NCBI RefSeq assembly: GCF_001447785.1
Contig: NW_015172015.1
Location: forward strand, 309,418-373,417
Length of the DNA: 64,000 nucleotides
Direction: 5' to 3'
Origin: Gekko japonicus
Lineage: Eukaryota
Shown: positions 1 to 11,303 of the stretch, piece after piece
Position numbering within the stretch: position 1 is the first letter of the stretch
Layout: each line of letters opens with the position of its first letter
Made by a program: the position numbers and the translations under genes
Notes under the pieces: generated by a model
Seen by the model: only the letters and a program-made list of their open reading frames with translations
The model's database searches: none
What the model was told of the DNA's origin: nothing

Positions 1-1
1 C

Positions 2-1834
2 CAGACGAGAAAAAACAGGGCAGCTCGTCTACACTTGGCCCTGATGGAGAAGGCATTATCTCCACAGTCCTCTTCGCCGTTAGACACGTCCGGGCACGCC
101 TCGATGTCTACCTTGGCTGCGGACACTTGTCCTCCCGTTCCGGGATCATCGACGTCGACGGTCGCAATCGATGCTTCGGCACCGAAACGATCGACGCCGA
201 TAAAGGACCACCCCGTACCTTCCAAGATCCGGAAGCAGGGGTCATCCGTTGCCGTACCTTCCAAGATCCGGAAGCAGGGCAAAGACTCACAGCAGTCGAA
301 GAAACCTAAAACGGACAAACCCAAAGTCCATAAGGTTTCGGCTAGTCAGGGTCGAGATCCCACGCAAGAACCTCACCCGATCGGTTCGGATCTCGACATC
401 GACCTTACTCAACAGACAAATCAGTCGCAATCTGATATGTCGAGCCGTCAATCCTCTCATGCCTCCCCAGAACGTGGAGTCGAGGATCGGCACCGACCAA
501 CTTCTCCTCCCCTGACTTGGGATGAGAGGCAATGGCATTATTTGTACGGGAATCGATACCCATACCCTTGGGCACTCCCGATACCACCCCCACCTGAATG
601 GGATCGTCAGTCGGTGTCATCCCGCATTTCGCGCTTTCAAGATCGACCATCGGTATCGAAGCAGTCGATACCGACGCATCCACCAGACCCGGTTGTGCCC
701 CCGATTAACACACCGGCACCGTCTCAACCTGAATTACTCGAATCATCTCCAGAACCATCCAATGTATCCTCCGATTCAGATGGCTTTTCTGAACATATCG
801 AGGATGTAGATGCACAGCCCACCTCGCAAGATGTGGAAGCGGATTTACCTATTTCTCCATCAGAGGATGTTAAGTCTTATGGAGATTTTATTCAACGCAT
901 GGCATTAGATCTATCTATGACTCCTACTCTCGTTGCCAGTTTTGTGGATGATAACGTTTTTGACATTATGCACTCTAACACTTCGCCCTCCGTGGCTCTA
1001 CCAATGACAAAAGTTCTCTTGCAAACTACCAAGGACTTTTGGACTCGTCCAGCCTCCATTAATGTCTCTAATAAGCGTCTGGATCACATGTACAAGGTCC
1101 AGGAATCAGGGGCTGAGTTTTTATACACACACCCAAAGCCCAATTCTTTGGTCGTCTCCTCATCCACAAAAGGAAAAGCGAGTCACTCTACTCCCTCAGA
1201 AAAAGAAGGGAAAAAGTTGGATTCGGTTGGTAGAAAATTCTACACTGTCGGTGCAATGGGCATTAAAACGGCGAACTATGCCGCCTGCATGGGCCGTTAT
1301 CAATTCAATTTATGGAAGCGTTTGAATGATTTCCTCCCGCACGTGCCCAAAGAGTGCCAACCTCAGATTAAAAGGATTCAGAATGAAGGGATGGTCTTGG
1401 CTAGACACCAAATTAGTGCTGCCAAGCATTCCCTGGAATCCGCTAGTAAGACTCTAGCAACCTCTGTAGCGTTACGCAGACATGCCTGGCTCCGCTCTTC
1501 ATCATTGCCATATGACACCAGATCCTCGGTGGAAGACCTTCCCTTTGAAGGTTCTGGATTGTTTAGCTCCACCACTGACACGGTTCTGCAGGAAATGGAT
1601 AAGAGTATCAAGACGTCCAAGAGTTTGGGGATCTCCCCCACGACCAAATACTCGAAATCCAAGCAGTGGCCTAGGCAACCTTGGTCGACCAGGCAACCGT
1701 ACAACAAATCACCTACGGATCAATGGCAAAGACCTCCCTCCTCTCAGTCACGGTCTTTTCCCCCGAAAAATAAGGGACAATCGTCCGGTGCCTATAAGTC
1801 GAAATTCCCTAAGAATCCCAAACAGGGACTTTGA
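2..1834 (+). CDS. DIRS gag-like ORF1 (5' partial; frame is open to the window edge)
   Basis: Frame reads QTRKNRAARLHLALMEKAL from position 2; low-complexity S/P-rich middle; C-terminal region with RRHAWLRSS...DLPFEGSGLF typical of vertebrate DIRS gag (LAP2alpha-like domain). Confidence 0.85.
   Translation, partial: QTRKNRAARLHLALMEKALSPQSSSPLDTSGHASMSTLAADTCPPVPGSSTSTVAIDASAPKRSTPIKDHPVPSKIRKQGSSVAVPSKIRKQGKDSQQSKKPKTDKPKVHKVSASQGRDPTQEPHPIGSDLDIDLTQQTNQSQSDMSSRQSSHASPERGVEDRHRPTSPPLTWDERQWHYLYGNRYPYPWALPIPPPPEWDRQSVSSRISRFQDRPSVSKQSIPTHPPDPVVPPINTPAPSQPELLESSPEPSNVSSDSDGFSEHIEDVDAQPTSQDVEADLPISPSEDVKSYGDFIQRMALDLSMTPTLVASFVDDNVFDIMHSNTSPSVALPMTKVLLQTTKDFWTRPASINVSNKRLDHMYKVQESGAEFLYTHPKPNSLVVSSSTKGKASHSTPSEKEGKKLDSVGRKFYTVGAMGIKTANYAACMGRYQFNLWKRLNDFLPHVPKECQPQIKRIQNEGMVLARHQISAAKHSLESASKTLATSVALRRHAWLRSSSLPYDTRSSVEDLPFEGSGLFSSTTDTVLQEMDKSIKTSKSLGISPTTKYSKSKQWPRQPWSTRQPYNKSPTDQWQRPPSSQSRSFPPKNKGQSSGAYKSKFPKNPKQGL
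213..279 (+). repeat. 28-bp direct repeat, 39-bp period, in gag (VPSKIRKQG twice)
   Basis: ccgtaccttccaagatccggaagcaggg at 213-240 and 252-279. Confidence 0.9.
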
Positions 1835-3710
1835 CTTCAACCTTACTGCTCAGACTCGCCTTGCACCCTTCCTGCACGCATGGCTCGCCATTTCTACGGA
1901 CAAATGGGTGCACTCTATAATAAGAGATGGCTATCTCATAGAGTTTTCTCTGACTCCCAGAATCTCCCGTTTCATCAGAACCCCGGCGTCTCCTGCCCTG
2001 CTACAGGAGGTACAATCGCTGACACAAAAAAACGCTATAGAGAAAGTCCCGATGGCGGATTGTTGCCGCGGGATTTATTCCAAATATTTCACAGTCCCCA
2101 AGAAGGACGGAGGACTTCGTCCAATCATGGACCTCCGTTTTCTCAATCGGTTCATCATTTACAGAAAGTTTCGCATGACCACGTTGCAAAGCATTTTACC
2201 ACTCCTGTCTCCAGGGACTTGGATGGTCACTTTAGATCTCAAAGACGCTTATTTTCACGTCTCCATCCATCCTCGTCACAGAAAGTTCCTCAGATTCGCA
2301 GTCGGGGAGGACCATTACCAATTCAAAGCCCTTCCATTCGGGCTCTCTACCGCCCCCAGGGTTTTTACGAAGGTAATGGTGGTTGTCGTCGCTCATCTTC
2401 GCCTTCAGGGCATTCAGATCTTTCCGTATATAGACGACTGGTTGATGGTGGCAGATTCAAGAGAATGTCTCCTTCAGCACATCACCATCACATTGTCGGT
2501 CCTATCCTCCCTTGGAATTCTGGTGAATTTACAGAAATCCATGCTGCAACCTGCAACTCGCGTGCAGTTCATAGGAGCTGTCATAGACTCCCTAGCCACT
2601 CGGGCGTACCTTCCTCGCCAACGGGCAGATACCATTCGTCTGGAAATTCAACGTTTGTTCCAGTCCAACGTGACATCAGCGGTCCACATTCAGCGGACCT
2701 TGGGTCTCATGGCAGCCACCACTTCCGTGATCGAATATGCACGCCTTCGCATGCGCCCGTTGCAGCTGTGGTTTCTAAAGAAATTTCGCCCTTCCATCCA
2801 TCCTCCGAGCCTTCAACTGGTAGTGCCTCCGCAGGTCCTCGTCTCCCTGCAGTGGTGGCTCGTGGACACCAATCTGTTGGCGGGTGCACCGTTCCAACCG
2901 ATCGTTCCCGTAATGTCCATCACCACAGATGCCTCCCTGTGGGGTTGGGGTGCTCATACAGACGACACTTGTGTGGGTGCTCCATGGCAACCCCTTTGGA
3001 AGAGTCATCATATCAACTATCTGGAACTGCTGGCCGTAAAGTTTGCCCTAAGATCCCTACTCAGACAGGTTGTAGGGAAGGATGTGTTGATTTTTACGGA
3101 CAACACAACTGCGATGGCTTATATCAATCGCCAGGGCGGGACCGTGTCCAGGTCCCTTTGCAGGCTAGCTATGGACATATGGGAAGAGTGCCTTCATTGG
3201 AACATCACTCTCCAAGCTGCCCATCTGCCAGGAACTTTGAACCAACAAGCGGATTTCCTGAGCAGAGGGGGAGCATCGGACCACGAATGGGAGTTGAACT
3301 CAAAGTATCTCCTTCCTCTTTTTCAACATCTGGGACATCCCCACATCGATGTTTTTGCAACTCGATTGAACAAGAAGTGTCCCAGGTTTTGCTCCAGAGC
3401 GGGGTTGGACCCTCTGTCAATGGGGGACGGTCTGTTGATGTCGTGGGCTCACGACTTTCTATACCTATTTCCTCCGATTCCGCTGCTCCACAGGGTGCTT
3501 GTGAAAATACAACAGGACAAGCCCCATTGTCTCCTGGTAGCCCCCTGGTGGCCTCGGCAGGTGTGGTTTCCGACACTGCTGCGGTTAGCCAAGGGATCCT
3601 TCGTACACTTCCCGCAGGAGTTGGATCTCCTCCAAGCTCAGGAAGGCCAGGTCCTTCACTACGATCCTCTGAGTCTCAAGTTGACTCTATGGGAAATACG
3701 CTTTCAGTGA
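1482..3710 (+). CDS. DIRS pol: reverse transcriptase, RNase H and C-terminal adenine-methyltransferase-like domain (true start uncertain; homology begins about 1833)
   Basis: RLAPFLHAW, KKDGGLRPIMDL, LDLKDAYFHV, LPFGLSTAPRVF, YIDD; RNase H TDASLWGWG, HINYLEL, TDNTT, NQQADFLSR; MT-like IDVFA...YLFPP...APWWPRQVWF. Confidence 0.95.
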   Translation: MPGSALHHCHMTPDPRWKTFPLKVLDCLAPPLTRFCRKWIRVSRRPRVWGSPPRPNTRNPSSGLGNLGRPGNRTTNHLRINGKDLPPLSHGLFPRKIRDNRPVPISRNSLRIPNRDFDFNLTAQTRLAPFLHAWLAISTDKWVHSIIRDGYLIEFSLTPRISRFIRTPASPALLQEVQSLTQKNAIEKVPMADCCRGIYSKYFTVPKKDGGLRPIMDLRFLNRFIIYRKFRMTTLQSILPLLSPGTWMVTLDLKDAYFHVSIHPRHRKFLRFAVGEDHYQFKALPFGLSTAPRVFTKVMVVVVAHLRLQGIQIFPYIDDWLMVADSRECLLQHITITLSVLSSLGILVNLQKSMLQPATRVQFIGAVIDSLATRAYLPRQRADTIRLEIQRLFQSNVTSAVHIQRTLGLMAATTSVIEYARLRMRPLQLWFLKKFRPSIHPPSLQLVVPPQVLVSLQWWLVDTNLLAGAPFQPIVPVMSITTDASLWGWGAHTDDTCVGAPWQPLWKSHHINYLELLAVKFALRSLLRQVVGKDVLIFTDNTTAMAYINRQGGTVSRSLCRLAMDIWEECLHWNITLQAAHLPGTLNQQADFLSRGGASDHEWELNSKYLLPLFQHLGHPHIDVFATRLNKKCPRFCSRAGLDPLSMGDGLLMSWAHDFLYLFPPIPLLHRVLVKIQQDKPHCLLVAPWWPRQVWFPTLLRLAKGSFVHFPQELDLLQAQEGQVLHYDPLSLKLTLWEIRFQ

Positions 3711-4723
3711 TGGATGACCGTATCAATGAGGTCCTGTTGAATTGTCGTAAACTGTCTACTAGGACGTCTTACGCAAAGAAGTGGGATTTATTCCTACAGT
3801 ACTTGAGTTCTTCCAATTTACCTCCTCCGCCAGTGGATTTGAGGTCTATTTTTGCGTTTATTTTGTCCAGAATGGACTTGGGACTCAGTTTTTCTTCAGT
3901 TAAGGTGTATTTAGCTGCGGTGTCAGCTTTTCATCCATCTATTGATGGGTTTTCAGTTTTCTCGCATCCTCAGACGAAACAGTTTTGTAAAGGTCTTATT
4001 CGCCTGTACCCTCCCCGTCGTTCTCCGACTCCGGCCTGGGATTTGGCTTTAGTTTTGCGGTTTTTGATGGGAAAACCCTTCGAACCACTGGCCACTTGCT
4101 CTCTAAAGTTGTTATCGCTCAAGACTGCGTTTCTGGTGGCCATTACTTCTGCTCGTCGAGTCAGTGAGTTGTCTGCTTTAAGGTGTGATCCACCATACTT
4201 GATTTTTTCCCCTCATGGGGTGTCGTTGTCTTTGGACATCTCCTTCTTACCGAAAGTCGTTTCGGAGTTTCATCTACGTTCAGATATAGTTTTGCCGTCA
4301 TTTTTCCCGTCTCCTGCCAATGAAGAGGAACGGAAATTGCACTCTCTGGATGTTAAGAGGGCGTTGCTGTTCTATTTGGGCAGGACCAAGTCTTTTCGTC
4401 AGTCTCCAGCCTTGTTTGTTGCTCACAGTATGCCCTCCCTAGGGAAGAAGATCTCTTCCCAGACGCTGTCCAGGTGGATTGTGGAAGTAATCAAGCTATG
4501 TTACGCTTTGGCTAAGAGACCTCTTCCAGGTCAACTTCGCGCCCACTCTACAAGGGCGGTGGCGGCTTCCACAGCTTTCCTGAGAGGGATGCCATTGGAG
4601 GACATCTGCAACGCTGCGACTTGGGCTACTCCGCTCACCTTCGTGAAGCATTATGCCCTTGATGTCCGGTCTACTCGTCGTGTGGCGTTGGGTCGGTCTA
4701 TCTTGCAGACGGCGCAGGTGTAG
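1880..4723 (+). CDS. DIRS ORF3: tyrosine recombinase (domain about 3710-4723) preceded by about 610 open codons overlapping pol
   Basis: SARRVSEL (Arg), AHSTRA (HxxR), FVKHY (catalytic Tyr); ATG at 3710 overlaps the pol stop (TGATG). Confidence 0.93.
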   Translation: MARHFYGQMGALYNKRWLSHRVFSDSQNLPFHQNPGVSCPATGGTIADTKKRYRESPDGGLLPRDLFQIFHSPQEGRRTSSNHGPPFSQSVHHLQKVSHDHVAKHFTTPVSRDLDGHFRSQRRLFSRLHPSSSQKVPQIRSRGGPLPIQSPSIRALYRPQGFYEGNGGCRRSSSPSGHSDLSVYRRLVDGGRFKRMSPSAHHHHIVGPILPWNSGEFTEIHAATCNSRAVHRSCHRLPSHSGVPSSPTGRYHSSGNSTFVPVQRDISGPHSADLGSHGSHHFRDRICTPSHAPVAAVVSKEISPFHPSSEPSTGSASAGPRLPAVVARGHQSVGGCTVPTDRSRNVHHHRCLPVGLGCSYRRHLCGCSMATPLEESSYQLSGTAGRKVCPKIPTQTGCREGCVDFYGQHNCDGLYQSPGRDRVQVPLQASYGHMGRVPSLEHHSPSCPSARNFEPTSGFPEQRGSIGPRMGVELKVSPSSFSTSGTSPHRCFCNSIEQEVSQVLLQSGVGPSVNGGRSVDVVGSRLSIPISSDSAAPQGACENTTGQAPLSPGSPLVASAGVVSDTAAVSQGILRTLPAGVGSPPSSGRPGPSLRSSESQVDSMGNTLSVMDDRINEVLLNCRKLSTRTSYAKKWDLFLQYLSSSNLPPPPVDLRSIFAFILSRMDLGLSFSSVKVYLAAVSAFHPSIDGFSVFSHPQTKQFCKGLIRLYPPRRSPTPAWDLALVLRFLMGKPFEPLATCSLKLLSLKTAFLVAITSARRVSELSALRCDPPYLIFSPHGVSLSLDISFLPKVVSEFHLRSDIVLPSFFPSPANEEERKLHSLDVKRALLFYLGRTKSFRQSPALFVAHSMPSLGKKISSQTLSRWIVEVIKLCYALAKRPLPGQLRAHSTRAVAASTAFLRGMPLEDICNAATWATPLTFVKHYALDVRSTRRVALGRSILQTAQV

Positions 4724-4767
4724 GGCCTCGGCCCCTCCTCCAGGTAAGAGTTATTGCTTGCTATTCT

Positions 4768-4861
4768 CCCAAGGGTGTGATGCACAGAGACCACGAAGAA
4801 GATAGACAGGTTGCTTACCTGTAACTGGTGATCTTCGAGTGGTCATCTGTGCATTCACACC
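4768..4861 (+). repeat. DIRS copy A internal complementary region (ICR)
   Basis: 4804-4861 is a perfect 58-bp reverse complement of the element terminus 5068-5125; 4768-4802 is an imperfect copy of 5062-5098 and should pair with the unseen left end. Confidence 0.9.
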
Positions 4862-5130
4862 ACCCGCCCTCCTTCCCCTCTGCTCTCGGCCCTTCATCTT
4901 GTTTCTTTGAAGGCTGTTGGGCGGCGGTCAGAAGGAACTGGCGGGATCTGCGTGCCCCTCCTTGGTCATGCGCAGTGGAGCCGGCGCGTGACCTGGGAGA
5001 GGCGCGAAAATCCCTTTTGCTAGCTATCGGTACCGAGAAGGTCAGCGCAGGCGCAGAGTATCCCAAGGGTGTGAATGCACAGATGACCACTCGAAGATCA
5101 CCAGTTACAGGTAAGCAACCTGTCTTTATC

Positions 5131-5914: not shown

Positions 5915-6257
5915 CCGTTCTCCCTCTGAGGTGGAGGACATCTCCATGGGTTATTCCCATCCTTCCTTTAGGGAGGTAGGAAACACTTTTTTCACCTTCC
6001 TCTTGGCGCCTTGGGAATAGCCCGCCTTCAGTTCTATTCCTGCCTCTTAGGGAGTAGCAGCTAGGGTCAAGGCTCTGTTTTCTTGACTGAATTTCTTGCA
6101 CTTTTGCTAAAAACTTTTTACCTTTTTTCTCCCTTCTCAATCTCTCCTGCTTGTTTCCTCTATATCTGCTTCTATCTTTTTCCTTGCCTGCTCATCAACA
6201 AGAGTCAAGAGCGGCGAGGGAGTTCCGTGGAGGACGAATGCTGCTGCATTAGAGAGA

Positions 6258-7899
6258 TGGCGATGGGAGCAGAGCACTCAGACCATTTCTCCTTGGCTGA
6301 GGATGAAACATTCGCCGCGGTGGCTGTCAGTGAGACCAACTGGCCCTCCGGGCTTGCTTGTGCCTCCCCAACGGACCCAGCAGGGGCAGCGGCGGCGGTG
6401 CGGAACACACAGAAGTGCCGCAGGACACGAGAAGATGCAGAGTCCGGCAAAATTGGCTGGATGAAGACAAGTGGTGGCCATCTTGGATTGGTGGCACGGG
6501 AGTTCGGCGATGGCAAGATTCCTCTGATGGGCATTCAACAGTGCATGGGAGCCAGTAAGACCCCCGATACGTGTCTCCCCAGGCCTGACCCACTTCCCGG
6601 GGGGGGGGGGCAATTCCCGGCGCTACAGGGGCCAAAATTTATTCCTTCAATTTAATGAGGTTCTTTAGACAGGCCATGCAGGAGGAGATGTCCTCCTTTT
6701 GTAACAAGATAGGACTCACTGGACAAGTGGGTGCCCAGGTCTACCCATCTCAAGGCCCCTCTCCCTGGCCTACCAAGGCAGCAAAGAAGGCACCTCCCAA
6801 TTCCCACAAAAGGCATAGAGGGGAACATAGGGAGGAGGAGGAGGATTCTTCCGTTTCCAACGTTGAAGACAGGAAGGAGGGCGAATTCCTCTCGGAGGAG
6901 GAAGATGAAGAAATGAAAATTCCAGAACAAGTCAGTAGATTCTTTAAGGCTGAGGATTATCAGTATTTCCTCATCAAGGCCATGAAAGCCCTAGAGATTC
7001 AGGATTCCCCGGCTATTGAAGAGCAGGGCATATTAAGCCCAGATTTAAGTTTCATTCCAGGGGGGTATCTGAATCCTCCCCCCCCCCGAGGAACTAGTTG
7101 AGAACGGTGTCTTCCCATTCCCTGAATATTTTGAGAGATAGCTCAGAATGGCTTGGGACAAACCAGCAGCAAACAGTTTCCTGGGTTTGTAAAAAGGTTA
7201 TATGCCTTACCTTCATATGCAAATGAGCTTTTACAGGTACCACTTTTACAGGCAGCCATCCAATCCACAGGCCTTGTCTCGGAAGATGGGCACGGATCCA
7301 TACGGGACCCGATTGACAAGAAGGTAGACGCCACACTCAAGAAAATTTATGAGGCCGTTACCATGATGGTGAGAGCGGCAGCTACTACTTCTATAGCCTC
7401 CAGAGCATCAATTGTCTGGATCCATAAATTAATCCAGCTATTACCAGAGAGCCTCCTTGAGGGCACCTCACACATTCTGAAGGGCGCCTCCATCTCTGCT
7501 GACGCCACTCTGGACATTTTAGCCTTTGCTTCTACTAACATGGCCAGATGCCTGCTCTGGCTAAGGGCCTGGCAGGTTGACTTCCAGTCAAAGCTAATGG
7601 TATCTGCCTATCCGTTCCAGGGAGATAGACTCTTTGGTGACGCCCTTGACAGAATTCCTGTGGAGACTCGTGACAAGAAGAAGGCCATGCCGAGAAACTT
7701 TTGCCAAACTGAACGTCAGAACACGCATTCCTTTCGTTCCCAACACACCTTGTCCAGGTTCCGTCAGGACCAGAAGAAGGGCAATTGGAGTACATCCAAG
7801 ACTTTCAGTTGAAGGGGAATGTTCAATTCCAAATTCCACAAGCCTCTAATCAACAGAGCTGACCAAGGGGACCAAGATTCCAAACCCAAGCAACAATGA
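6258..7899 (+). pseudogene. DIRS copy B gag (disrupted; start approximate)
   Basis: RCLLWLRAW...YPFQGDRLFG motif; frame of ORF 7153 continues past a stop at 7810 to TGA 7897-7899. Confidence 0.75.
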
Positions 7900-9790
7900 C
7901 TATGCGTCCCTTCCCGTGGGGGCACACCTTCTCTCCTTCTCTGCAACCTGGACAGTATCACAAGCAGATGTCTGGGCACAGGAGGTGGTGTCCCACGGCC
8001 ACACGATAGAATTCCGTCACCCCCCTCCAGAAAGATTCCTGGTCTTGCCTGTCAGCAAGTCCATTGCCAAAAGAGCCTTAGTAGACAGGGCACTCCAACA
8101 TCTGCTGGCCATTCGGGCCATAGAGCCTGTTCCCCTGACAGAACGAGGTCAACGGGGTCTACTCCATTCTCTTTCTGGTCCCCAAGAGGAACAGCGACTG
8201 GAGGGCCATTTTGGACCTGAAATTCCTCAACAGGTTCATTCGGCTTCACCACTTTAGAATGGAGACGCTCAAGTCTATCACAGAGACCTTACTGCCAGGT
8301 GACTATCTAACCTCCATAGACCTCACAGAGGCCTATCTCCACGTTCCCATCCATCAGACACACAAGAGGTTCCTCCGGTTTTGTGTCGGACAAAGCCATT
8401 TTCAGTATCGAGCACTGCCGTTCGGTCTTTCAAGTGCACCTCGGCTGTTTTCCAAGCTCCTCATCAATCCAGTAGTTCACCTCAGGAAACAGGGAGTTCA
8501 CATTCACCCCTATTTCGACGACCTGCTGGTGAGGGGCAACGACCTGAATTCGGCCATCCAAAACACTTCAAGGACAGTTCAGTGTCTACAAGAACACGGA
8601 TTCATAATCAACCTTCAGAAGAGTTGTCTGTGTCCATCGCAGAAAATCGAGCACCTGGGAGCAATAATAGACACGGAGTGCAATTCGCTCTTCCTGCCCT
8701 TAGACAAGGCTGTCAAGATTCGAGACATGGCTGGCTCGGTGATTCAGAGTTCTTCCACTCCCCTGATGTCATTGGCCAAGCTACTGAGTCTAATGGTCTC
8801 CTGCATAGACCTGGCTCAGTGAGCCCGTTTCCACTCCAGGTTGCTTCAGTGGTTTCTCAGGTTATATCAGCACCAGATTATGGAGCGCAAGTTTGTGAAT
8901 CTACGCGTCACGGCACAAGTCAGCCTTCTCTGGTGGACATCTCTACAGAACTTGAGGCAGGGCAAAGTATACTATGCCCCATTCTTCAAGGAAATTTTTA
9001 CAGACTCCAGTCTCATGGGCTGGGAAGCAATCCTGGAAGGAATTCCGGTCCAGGGACGTTGGTCCAGGGAGGAACAAAGTCTCCCTATCAACTTGCTGGA
9101 GCTAAGAGCAATCTGCAACACCCTCAATCATTTCAGTTAGGCGATTCGCAGGCAGCACGTTTTGGTCCGAACGGACAACATCTCAGCCAAAGCGTATCTC
9201 AACAATCAGGGTGGTTCCAGGTCCTCTCGACTGCATTGGGAAGCTGTACAGATCCTCAGTTGGGCCAAGAAGAATGTGACGACACTCCAGGCCGAGCATG
9301 TGAAAGGAGTTACCAACGCCCAAGCGGACTGGCTCAGCTGGGAAACCATTCTAGAGGCGGAATGGGCACTCCATCCGAGGGTATTTCGACTTCATTGTGC
9401 AACATCTTGGTCGACCATTGGTGGATCTCTTTGCTTCACCAGAGAACCATCAAGTTCCTTGGTTCTTCTTGAGATATCATCATCTGGAAGCGGAAGCGAC
9501 GGATGCCCTCACTGCTGCCTGGCCCCAGGGGCTTTTTTATGCGTTCCCTCCACTTCCATTGATACCCAGAACCATCCGTCGGATCTGGGAGGAGAGGGCA
9601 CAAGTCATCCTGGTGGCCCCCTGTGGGCAAGGCGCCCCTGGTATTCAGCGCTGTTGGAGCTGGCCATCCTTCCTCCTCTACCTCTGATGAAGTCTGCGGA
9701 CATGCTGCTGCAGGGACCAATCTGGCACCCCCATCTGGAGTGGCTCTGTCTAACCGCCTGGAGATTGAGCGGCAACAGTTCTCCCAGCTG
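7898..9790 (+). pseudogene. DIRS copy B pol (RT-RNaseH-MT), with frameshifts and stops
   Basis: PVGAHLLSFSATW, IDLTEAYLHVP, LPFGLSSAPRLF, YFDD, TDSSLMGW, INLLEL, TDN, VDLFAS...YAFPP. Confidence 0.9.
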
Positions 9791-10832
9791 GGTTATTCTA
9801 CACAGGTGATGGATACGATGCTAGCCTCCAGACGACAATCCACCATCCATATATATAACACGACCTGGAAGGCCTTTGTCAGATGGTACAGGAGGAAGAA
9901 GGTCAACGCTGTCCTCCACAGTGGCCTCGGTGTTAGCCTTTCTGCAAGATGGTCTGGATTCCGGGTTGAAGGTCCCCACTCTTCGCAGAAAGTCAGTGGC
10001 ATTATCTACTGTCCTTCCATTACTGGGAGGATATAAATTAACCAAACACCCGCATCTCCAGTTGTTTCTACAGGGAGCGTCTGCCAAGTCTCCACCACAG
10101 GTCCATCGGTTCCCTGCGTGGAAACTAAACACAGTCCTGACTGCTCTGACCAAGTCTCCCTTCGAGCCTCTTAGGGAGGTTTCCTTGAAGTGGCTAAGAA
10201 TGAAGACACTCTTCCTGGTGGCCATAACATCGGCACATCGAGTCTCAGAGATTAGTGCCTTCTCTGTCAAGTCTACGCTGTGCGTCTTTCACAAGGACAA
10301 AATTGTCCTCAGGATTGATCCTACCTTCCAGCCAAAAGTGTTGTTCGTTTTCCACCATTCTCAGGAAGTCTACCTACCTTCATTTTGTCCTAATCCTAAG
10401 CACCCTAAAGAGGTCCTGTGGCATAAGCTAGACATTAGGCATGCTCTGAAGATTTACATCCTCAGGACGGAACCAATCAGGAAGACGGACTTTATGTTCA
10501 TCAATATATCTCCACACAGAGTAGGTGACAGCATGTCCAAGACGTCAATCAGCACGGTTCTTAGATCCTGCATATCAGAGGCCTACGAGGCAGCTGGCCT
10601 GGAGGTTCCTAAAGGGATCACGGCACATTCCCTGAGGAGTGCTTCCACCAACACAGCCTTTTCAAACCAGGCGACAGTCGATGAAGTGTGCAGAGCAGCA
10701 ACCTGGACTTCCATCTCTGCGTTAGTCCGGCACTATAAACTGAACACCTTTGCCTCTGCTGATGCAGCATTTGGAAGAAGATTCCTTCAGCACATCCTGA
10801 CTGCAACTGACGATGACGACTCACCCAAATGA
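9770..10832 (+). pseudogene. DIRS copy B tyrosine recombinase (one frameshift near 9910)
   Basis: SAHRVSEI, AHSLRS, LVRHY. Confidence 0.9.
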
Positions 10833-10853
10833 GGGACACTGCTCTGGGAGGTT

Positions 10854-10942
10854 CCATGGAGATGTCCTCCACCTCAGAGGGAGAACGGCCATTGGCACTT
10901 ACCATGAAGGGTCCTTCTCCTCTGAGGTCAGGAGGACATCTC
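10854..10942 (+). repeat. DIRS copy B ICR
   Basis: 10854-10888 is the exact reverse complement of 5915-5949; 10889-10942 is the near-exact reverse complement of 11245-11298. Confidence 0.93.
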
Positions 10943-11303
10943 GGCCCTCCCGTATTTCATTGTCTTCTCTATCTGTTGGTGCTGATCTCTTCTTCCTTCT
11001 GAGTTTTTCTCTTTTCTTCTGTCAGGCCATCTGTACTCAAGGGGGATCAGCACAGTGACTGTAATATAGTTCAAGTTAACAATGTTATCAGAGTTTTCTG
11101 TCCCTATACAGGAGAGTTAGTTTTGGTTAGAGTTTACTGCTTGCGGAGTCCCAGAACTGAAGGCGGGGCTATTCCCAAGGTGCCAAGAGGAAGGGGAAAA
11201 AAGTGTTTCCTGCCTCCCTAAAGGAATGATGGGAATAACCCATGGAGATGTCCTCCTGACCTCAGAGGAGAAGGACCCTTCACAGTAAGTGCCAATGGTC
11301 GTT

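What the first reader, a model, noticed from the sequence alone, without database searches (positions are those of the whole stretch)
1826..1882. Candidate translational recoding switch at the DIRS gag stop (CTT-TGA-C): terminate, +1 shift into RT, or read through into the recombinase
Seen: gag ends GGA CTT TGA CTT. The +1 frame reads TTT GAC and goes straight into the start of RT homology (DFNLTAQTRLAPFLHAW). The 0 frame after this single TGA has no further stop until 4723, the end of the tyrosine recombinase. Established: CUU-UGA-C is the +1 shift site of bacterial prfB, stop-dependent +1 shifting also occurs in eukaryotic antizyme, and UGA-C is a leaky termination context. Inference: one codon could yield Gag, Gag-Pol (+1) and Gag-ORF3-YR (readthrough). 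I do not know of this being described for vertebrate DIRS. A competing reading is that TTTGAC is a branch point ahead of the acceptor-like cttactgctcag at 1842-1853.
Basis: partly seen in the sequence, partly recalled or inferred. Interest (0 to 1): 0.85.

Follow-up and report, generated by a model that had tools for sequence, protein, structure and literature searches.

The report
DIRS gag stop: likely recoding hub
The single stop codon that ends gag in this DIRS retrotransposon sits exactly where the polymerase frame (+1) and the recombinase frame (same frame as gag) both begin. Comparison with about 30 other DIRS families indicates that ribosomes are diverted at this codon to make both enzymes, a decoding arrangement I could not find described for these elements.

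Summary
Gag ends GGA CTT TGA C (TGA at 1832-1834). Pol (RT/RNase H/MT-like) follows in the +1 frame. The gag frame has no other stop between position 1 and 4721, the end of the tyrosine recombinase (YR).

- **Shared architecture:** in 25 of 27 metagenomic DIRS1-like loci with a YR match, YR lies in the gag frame inside one roughly 3 kb open stretch that starts at the gag stop. Pol is overprinted in +1.
- **Open frame:** synonymous shuffles expect 8-38 gag-frame stops across pol per locus. 27 of 28 loci have none.
- **No early start codon:** about 87 stops are expected before the first in-frame ATG. None is seen.
- **Leaky stops:** TGA 21/29 and TGA-C 15/29 at gag stops, against 2/21 and 0/21 at YR stops.
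- **Slip codon:** in the window's clade gag ends [KR]-[QRK]-x-[VLFI]-stop (30/42, p 5e-28) and pol reads F-D there. This implies NUU-UGA, the antizyme-type +1 site.

My odds are 0.64 for a +1 shift at this codon, 0.5 for readthrough and 0.4 for both. First-stage readers noted the same idea on other DIRS copies of this genome (s1-833100, s1-818657).

The parts
2..1834 (+). gag ORF (5' end cut by the window start), ending KNPKQGL-TGA
   Evidence: open from position 2 to TGA 1832. Homologous to DIRS gag proteins of squamates and turtles. Weak Pfam LAP2alpha match (E 0.023).
1829..1835 (+). Proposed recoding site CTT TGA C: last sense codon, gag stop and +4 C. TTT GAC is read in the +1 frame.
   Evidence: In the clade, gag ends in [VLFI] in 30 of 42 cluster representatives. 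Pol N-termini read F-D or F-E at this point in 9 sauropsid families. TGA-C is enriched at gag stops.
1836..3710 (+). pol ORF (RT, RNase H, MT-like region) in the +1 frame. The frame is open from 1470. There is no ATG between 1509 and 2052.
   Evidence: 624 aa aligned with 24 DIRS pol proteins.
1835..3709 (+). X: 625 codons of the gag frame overprinted on pol, stop-free
   Evidence: 0 stops against 22.1 expected. In related pairs the X frame shows dN/dS 1.3-2.0, so it is not conserved as a protein.
3710..4723 (+). Tyrosine recombinase domain in the gag frame, ending TAG 4721
   Evidence: 58% identity to YR ORFs of reptiles, and hits named Tyr recombinase by UniRef. Weak Pfam Phage_int_SAM_1 and Phage_integrase matches in the right order. 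tblastn matches in 54 loci.
3708..3712 (+). The pol stop TGA overlaps an ATG of the YR frame (TGATG)
   Evidence: This kind of overlap occurs in only 4 of 25 loci.
4804..4861 (+). Internal complementary region (ICR)
   Evidence: 58 nt, 100% complementary to 5068-5125.
5068..5125 (+). Right terminus of the element

Best explanation
Window 1-5125 holds a young DIRS1-like retrotransposon with intact ORFs. Its 5' end is cut by the window.

Most ribosomes translating the genomic RNA terminate at UGA 1832 and release Gag. I propose two minority events at the same codon.

1. **+1 frameshift.** With CUU in the P site and the slowly decoded UGA-C in the A site, peptidyl-tRNA-Leu re-pairs on UUU, or the U is skipped. 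GAC is read next, giving a Gag-Pol fusion (...KQGL-DFNL...).
2. **Readthrough.** A near-cognate tRNA decodes UGA. The ribosome continues in frame 0 through the 625-codon spacer X that lies over pol and reaches the recombinase, giving Gag-X-YR.

DIRS elements have no protease. Fusion to Gag would be the way both enzymes reach the Gag particle.

**Shown:** the frames, the single stop, the selection against stops in X, the leaky stop contexts, and the conserved NUU before the stop in this clade.

**Inferred:** both decoding events, their site and their products.

**Odds:** +1 shift at this codon 0.64, readthrough 0.5, both 0.4.
For: **(1) Conserved architecture.**
- In 25 of 27 metagenomic DIRS1-like loci with a YR match, YR lies in the gag frame. 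It sits inside one 2.9-3.1 kb open stretch whose upstream boundary is exactly the gag stop. Pol is +1 of gag.

**(2) Selection keeps X open.**
- Gag-frame stops over pol sum to 4 observed against 600 expected from synonymous shuffles. 27 of 28 loci have none.
- The other overlapping frame matches expectation (1161 observed, 1060 expected).
- X is not conserved as a protein, so only translatability is selected.

**(3) Entry into X is upstream of any AUG.**
- The first in-frame ATG lies 24-1479 nt after the stop.
- 87 stops are expected in those 8,784 nt and 0 are seen.

**(4) Pol needs gag.**
- In at least 13 of 29 loci there is no ATG in the pol frame between the upstream pol-frame stop and the gag stop.
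- In the window there is none between 1509 and 2052.

**(5) Gag stops are leaky types.**
- TGA: 21/29 at gag stops against 2/21 at YR stops (p 1e-5).
- TGA-C: 15/29 against 0/21 (p 4e-5).
- TAA: 0/29 against 7/21.

**(6) Conserved slip codon in the window's own clade.**
- Gag ends [KR]-[QRK]-x-[VLFI]-stop. The last residue is V, L, F or I in 30 of 42 representatives, against 5.8% in the rest of the tail (p 5e-28).
- Pol-frame N-termini read F-D or F-E at that point.
- Together these imply NUU-UGA-C/G.

**(7) Published support for the site.**
- UUU-, GUU- and AUU-UGA are natural antizyme +1 sites.
- CUU-UGA shifts as well as UCC-UGA in COS-7 cells (PMC1874602).

**(8) Frameshifting elsewhere in the order.**
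- 7 of 9 loci with pol in the -1 frame carry canonical in-phase slippery heptamers in the gag/pol overlap (p 4e-7).
Against:
- No stimulatory RNA structure follows the stop in the window (z -0.7), and there is no Rfam match.
- Outside the window's clade the P-site codon is variable and often cannot re-pair in +1 (CAA, CAG, AAG, AGA). A single slip mechanism therefore cannot hold for all families.
- In the window itself an in-frame ATG lies only 48 nt after the stop, so this copy alone cannot separate readthrough from initiation at 1880.
- The pol stop overlaps a YR-frame ATG (TGATG, 3708-3712), which offers another route to YR.
- The loci share ancestry and are not independent, so the frame relations could be inherited.
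- Two recoding events at one codon have no precedent that I know of.
Confidence: 0.4

Rival explanations
1. Only the +1 frameshift happens at the gag stop. YR is made some other way: by termination-reinitiation at the TGATG overlap (3708-3712) after pol, by a -1 shift from pol near its end, or by initiation at ATG 1880.
For: - The TGATG overlap at 3708-3712 exists, and ATGA overlaps occur in L009, L032 and L037.
- ATG 1880 lies 48 nt after the stop.
- A published figure legend speculates on a frameshift joining pol and YR in DIRS-1, untested (PMC5006619).
Against: - None of these routes needs frame 0 to stay open over about 1.9 kb, yet it does in 27 of 28 loci.
- 8 loci have no YR-frame ATG within -150 to +200 nt of the pol stop.
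- The stretch before the first in-frame ATG is also stop-free (0 observed, 87 expected).
- ATG 1880 derives from the codon pair GCA TGG of an invariant pol tryptophan. It is present in about a quarter of families, as chance predicts.
Confidence: 0.25
2. Pol and/or YR are expressed from spliced or subgenomic mRNAs. TTTGAC and CTTAC act as branch points for the acceptor-like AG at 1853, which opens directly onto the pol frame.
For: - The acceptor-like tract at 1842-1853 is present.
- NCBI automatic gene models in Sceloporus, Pantherophis and Rhineura join gag to X-YR by skipping the stop region.
- First-stage notes report splice-like signals in other DIRS copies of this genome (s1-818800, s1-821547, unchecked).
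- A CAG|GTAAGC motif sits 15 nt from this element's right end.
Against: - The spacer after the stop is not conserved in length or sequence among sauropsid families, while the F-D at the stop is.
- After 1853 the pol frame has no ATG until 2052.
- Splicing would not require the stop to abut both frames or X to stay open from exactly the stop.
- Gene models are automatic predictions that avoid stops.
Confidence: 0.12
3. The frameshift to pol happens elsewhere in the 365-nt gag/pol overlap (1470-1834), or pol starts at ATG 1482. The stop codon itself is not the site.
For: The pol frame is open from 1470, and ATG 1482 lies near its start.
Against: - The openness is what the gag tail's composition gives by itself (P 0.25 in the window; only 1 of 21 loci has P below 0.05).
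- The first pol-frame ATG is at no conserved place, and none lies before the gag stop in at least 13 of 29 loci.
- The conserved positions are the last four gag codons and the stop.
Confidence: 0.1

Closest known systems
Antizyme (OAZ) +1 programmed frameshift
   Same: A stop-dependent +1 shift occurs at the codon before a UGA. Natural P-site codons include UUU, GUU and AUU, and CUU-UGA works equally well in mammalian cells (PMC1874602). The P-site codon also varies between lineages.
   Different: Antizyme shifting senses polyamines and uses 5' elements and 3' pseudoknots. Neither was found here. Antizyme ORF1 is short and no readthrough product is used.
Bacterial prfB (RF2) CUU UGA C +1 frameshift
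   Same: The heptanucleotide CUU UGA C is identical, and the logic is the same: a slow stop in the A site and Leu-tRNA slipping onto UUU.
   Different: prfB depends on an upstream Shine-Dalgarno-like pairing with 16S rRNA and on RF2 level. Neither applies to a vertebrate ribosome.
Ty1 and Ty3 gag-pol +1 frameshifting in yeast
   Same: A retroelement Gag-Pol fusion is made by a +1 shift. Ty1 uses CUU in the P site.
   Different: Ty1 and Ty3 pause on a rare sense codon (AGG, AGU), not on a stop. This statement rests on my own knowledge of the field and on review PMC5009743.
Gammaretrovirus (MuLV) gag-pol readthrough, and UGA-C / UGA-CUA readthrough of alphaviruses and plant viruses
   Same: A single leaky stop separates gag from a long downstream in-frame ORF. 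The UGA-C, UGA-CUN, UGA-CGG and UAG-G contexts seen at DIRS gag stops are the classical leaky contexts (from my own knowledge).
   Different: MuLV uses a pseudoknot 8 nt after UAG. No such structure was found in the window. In DIRS the downstream in-frame ORF leads to the recombinase, not to pol, and 1.9 kb of it is an overprinted spacer.
DIRS-1 of Dictyostelium and the 'long ORF overlap' of DIRS1-like elements
   Same: The element has gag, RT/RH/MT and YR ORFs, with the YR ORF overlapping pol. Such an overlap is noted in half of 28 annotated elements (PMC3266345). It also has an ICR complementary to the terminus.
   Different: The papers I could read give no mechanism. They do not state that the YR ORF starts exactly at the gag stop in gag's frame. 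The only remark found is an untested frameshift between pol and YR (PMC5006619).

Membership tests
DIRS1-like retrotransposon | gag-like ORF1 | tested here: met
   Homologous to DIRS gag proteins of reptiles. Weak LAP2alpha match, as reported for Xenopus DIRS ORF1.
DIRS1-like retrotransposon | pol with RT, RNase H and a methyltransferase-like region, and no protease or DDE integrase | tested here: met
   RVT_1 at E 3e-23. Full-length alignment to 24 DIRS pol proteins that carry RVT_1 and RNase H Pfam domains. The MT-like part aligns but has no Pfam match.
DIRS1-like retrotransposon | Tyrosine recombinase ORF | tested here: met
   Sub-threshold Pfam Phage_int_SAM_1 and Phage_integrase matches. 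R, HxxR and Y motifs can be read in the translation.
DIRS1-like retrotransposon | Inverted terminal repeats plus an internal region complementary to the termini | tested here: inconclusive
   The ICR at 4804-4861 is 100% complementary to the right terminus at 5068-5125. The left terminus lies outside the window.
Stop-dependent +1 frameshift site (antizyme type) | A shift-prone codon immediately 5' of a UGA, with the downstream ORF in +1 | tested here: met
   CTT TGA C with pol in +1. NUU is conserved in the clade.
Stop-dependent +1 frameshift site (antizyme type) | Stimulatory 5' element and/or 3' structure | tested here: inconclusive
   No 3' structure (z -0.7) and no Rfam match. The conserved AAR CAR upstream ([KR]-[QRK]) could be a 5' element or a gag peptide motif.
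Stop-dependent +1 frameshift site (antizyme type) | A measured trans-frame product | not testable with these tools
Programmed stop-codon readthrough | A leaky stop context with a long in-frame ORF downstream that is kept open by selection | tested here: met
   UGA-C. 0 stops against 22 expected in the window and 4 against 600 over 28 loci. TGA-C is enriched at gag stops.
Programmed stop-codon readthrough | A known 3' motif (CUAG, CGG, CARYYA) or a downstream structure | tested here: not met
   The window has UGA CUU CAA and no structure. Some other loci have UGA CUA or UGA CGG.
Programmed stop-codon readthrough | A measured extended product | not testable with these tools
   No reads or proteomics were available.

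The most novel reading that the evidence does not exclude
In the main clade of DIRS1-like retrotransposons of animals, one leaky stop codon is a conserved three-way decoding switch.

- Termination gives Gag.
- A stop-dependent +1 shift gives Gag-Pol.
- Readthrough gives Gag-X-YR.

The roughly 600-codon frame laid over pol would be kept free of stops only so that ribosomes can travel through it to the recombinase. Related clades appear to use permuted solutions. Some have gag and pol in one frame separated by a stop, with X-YR in -1. Others have pol in -1 with classical slippery heptamers.
Probability: 0.35. Interest if true: 0.85.

Novelty: new variant of a known kind. Interest (0 to 1): 0.72.

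Why it matters
- **An open question in the papers I could read.** How DIRS elements express pol and the recombinase is not explained in any paper I could read. The long ORF overlap is recorded there without a mechanism.
- **A possible new case in recoding.** Two recoding events on one stop codon would be new, as would a 1.9 kb overprinted frame selected only for being translatable.
- **Directly testable.** A 150-nt reporter insert would test the idea.
- **Use in annotation.** Automatic gene models of these elements currently invent introns to skip the stop. The single-stop rule gives a simple test for intact DIRS copies.

Tried and rejected
- **A downstream RNA structure.** None in general or in the window. 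One family (L028, L031) has a strong hairpin. There is no Rfam match.
- **dS comparison to test constraint on X.** Pairs are saturated in dS. Only the ratio pattern is usable.
- **First YR tblastn.** It was run in the wrong frame through my own error and was redone.
- **Gag tblastn.** Gag is too divergent to find in the metagenomic loci, so gag there is defined by ORF structure.
- **-1 heptamers in L023 and L058.** None found in the overlap.
- **Gag-X-YR gene models at NCBI.** Judged to be pipeline artefacts or unverifiable.
Full report
**What is in the window.** Positions 1-5125 hold one DIRS1-like retrotransposon on the + strand, with its 5' end cut by the window start.
- Gag runs in the frame where position mod 3 = 2 and ends GGA CTT TGA at 1826-1834.
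- Pol carries RVT_1 (E 3e-23) and aligns over 624 residues with DIRS pol proteins. It runs in the +1 frame from the stop to TGA 3708.
- The recombinase domain (3710-4723) is back in the gag frame.
- A 58-nt internal region (4804-4861) is perfectly complementary to the right terminus (5068-5125).
- All three ORFs are intact, so this is a young copy.
- A second, decayed DIRS of another family lies at about 5933-11256. It has CAA TGA C at 7897 and pol also in +1.

**Check of the observation.** A stop map of the three forward frames shows the following.
- TGA 1832 is the only stop of the gag frame between position 1 and 4721.
- The pol frame is open from 1470 to 3708.
- The third frame has about 85 stops.
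- Shuffling synonymous codons of pol, which keeps its protein and codon usage, gives 22.1 gag-frame stops on average between 1835 and 3708. None is observed, and no shuffle reached zero.

**Related sequences.** I therefore used two other sources.
- *Proteins.* Gag, pol and YR searches found squamate, turtle, amphibian and fish DIRS proteins. The nearest are 50-60% identical, so this family itself is not in the databases.
- *DNA.* A scan of metagenome contigs with a pol alignment returned 80 DIRS-like loci with 27-46% pol identity. Their host organisms are unknown.

**The architecture is general.**
- In about 30 loci with a long upstream ORF, pol is +1 of that ORF. The ORF's stop lies 4-154 nt before the first aligned pol residue.
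- In 25 of 27 loci with a YR match, YR is in the gag frame. It sits inside one 2.9-3.1 kb open stretch whose upstream limit is exactly the gag stop.
- Summed over 28 loci, the gag frame has 4 stops across pol where 600 are expected. The other overlapping frame has 1161 against 1060 expected.
- In related pairs pol shows dN/dS of 0.1-0.3 with saturated dS. The overprinted frame shows a ratio of 1.3-2.0. It is therefore not conserved as a protein, only kept free of stops.

**Where translation enters frame 0.**
- The first in-frame ATG after the gag stop lies anywhere from 24 to 1479 nt downstream.
- The 8,784 nt that precede it in 26 loci should hold about 87 stops and hold none.
- No YR-frame ATG is conserved at the pol stop.
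- The ATG at 1880 in the window comes from the codon pair GCA TGG of an invariant pol tryptophan. It is present in about a quarter of families, which is what chance gives.
- The simplest reading is that ribosomes enter X from gag, through the stop.

**How pol is reached.**
- In at least 13 of 29 loci the pol frame has no ATG between its upstream stop and the gag stop. In the window there is none between 1509 and 2052. Pol therefore needs to be joined to gag.
- The long pol-frame openness upstream of the stop is not a clue to the site. The gag tail has few hydrophobic codons, and shuffles give the same length.
- What is conserved is the very end of gag. Among 42 cluster representatives whose alignment reaches the C-terminus, the tail ends [KR]-[QRK]-x-[VLFI]. 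The last residue is V, L, F or I in 30, against 5.8% in the preceding 36 positions (p 5e-28).
- Pol-frame N-termini of nine sauropsid families read F-D or F-E at the matching point. The window lies with them in a 99%-supported clade.
- An F codon in +1 that spans the last two bases of gag and the first base of the stop implies NTT TGA. The slip target UUU is therefore conserved.
- UUU-, GUU- and AUU-UGA are natural antizyme shift sites. CUU-UGA is as good as UCC-UGA in COS-7 cells (PMC1874602).

**Stop contexts.**
- Gag stops are TGA in 21 of 29 loci, TAG in 8 and never TAA.
- TGA-C makes up 15 and TAG-G makes up 6.
- Terminal YR stops in the same loci are TGA in 2 of 21, TAA in 7 and never TGA-C (p 1e-5 to 1e-3).
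- These loci are related, so the tests overstate independence. The contrast is nevertheless within the same elements.

**Other clades.**
- Nine loci have pol in -1 of gag. Seven of them carry in-phase classical slippery heptamers in the short overlap (A_AAA_AAG, U_UUA_AAC, G_GGA_AAC and others; p 4e-7).
- Five loci have gag and pol in one frame separated by a single stop (CAA TGA CTT, TGA CTA, TAG GGG).
- In two of those five, X-YR starts in the -1 frame 100-250 nt before that stop.
- Recoding at the end of gag therefore looks like the rule in this order, with different frame permutations.

**What argues against.**
- There is no expression evidence.
- No 3' structure follows the stop in the window (z -0.7), and there is no Rfam match.
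- Outside the window's clade the codon before the stop varies between close relatives and often cannot re-pair. A stop-dependent shift without slippage would be needed there.
- In the window, ATG 1880 and the TGATG overlap at 3708-3712 offer other routes to YR.
- Automatic NCBI models join gag to X-YR by skipping the stop. This shows only that pipelines avoid stops.
- Splicing cannot be excluded without RNA data. However, the spacer after the stop is not conserved, and an acceptor at 1853 would leave pol without a start codon.

**Literature.**
- Searches of the held library found the 'long ORF overlap' recorded without a mechanism (PMC3266345).
- ORF overlaps are noted in Xenopus DIRS (PMC9210276).
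- One untested remark proposes a frameshift joining pol to YR in DIRS-1 (PMC5006619).
- DIRS is not mentioned in the part of the large frameshifting review that the library holds, the first 300,000 of its 449,034 characters (PMC5009743).
- The founding DIRS papers of 2001-2005 are not in the library, so an earlier statement there cannot be excluded.

**Verdict.**
- My odds are 0.64 for a +1 shift at CUU-UGA, 0.5 for readthrough into X-YR and 0.4 for both.
- First-stage readers noted the same idea on other DIRS copies of this genome (s1-833100, s1-818657). Those notes are unchecked.

Noticed in passing
window 3708-3712: The pol stop TGA overlaps an ATG of the recombinase frame (TGATG). The YR homology starts at that Met. 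Similar ATGA overlaps occur in L009, L032 and L037 but not in most loci. This could be a termination-reinitiation route in a minority of families.
   Followed up: partly
window 5108-5116: A consensus 5' splice donor (CAG|GTAAGC) lies 15 nt from the right terminus of the element, inside the arm that pairs with the ICR. Another first-stage note reports the same in other DIRS copies.
   Followed up: no
window 5933-11256: A second, decayed DIRS of a different family is bounded by 91-nt inverted repeats (96% complementary). Its gag frame shows TGA at 7810 and CAA TGA C at 7897, pol is in +1, and there are many frameshifts.
   Followed up: partly
L017, L035, L040, L041, L048, L049, L052: These are DIRS-like loci with pol in the -1 frame. 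They carry canonical -1 slippery heptamers in phase within the gag/pol overlap (7 of 9 loci).
   Followed up: partly
L023, L058, L012, L065, L067: These are DIRS-like loci with gag and pol in one frame separated by a single stop (CAA TGA CTT, TGA CTA, TAG GGG). In L023 and L058 the long YR frame begins in -1, 100-250 nt before that stop.
   Followed up: partly
L028:2090-2160 and L031:3570-3640: A hairpin of about 23 bp lies 45-90 nt after the gag stop (AAG TGA CTT family). MFE z-scores are -5 and -6, with three compensatory pairs. It overlaps the conserved PVGG pol motif.
   Followed up: partly
L035, L044, L048, L052: The frame that ends in YR is open for about 3.7 kb and also overlaps most of the upstream gag-like ORF. 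This is a third arrangement that I did not resolve.
   Followed up: no
window 205-281: A short tandem duplication inside gag encodes PVPSKIRKQG twice.
   Followed up: no
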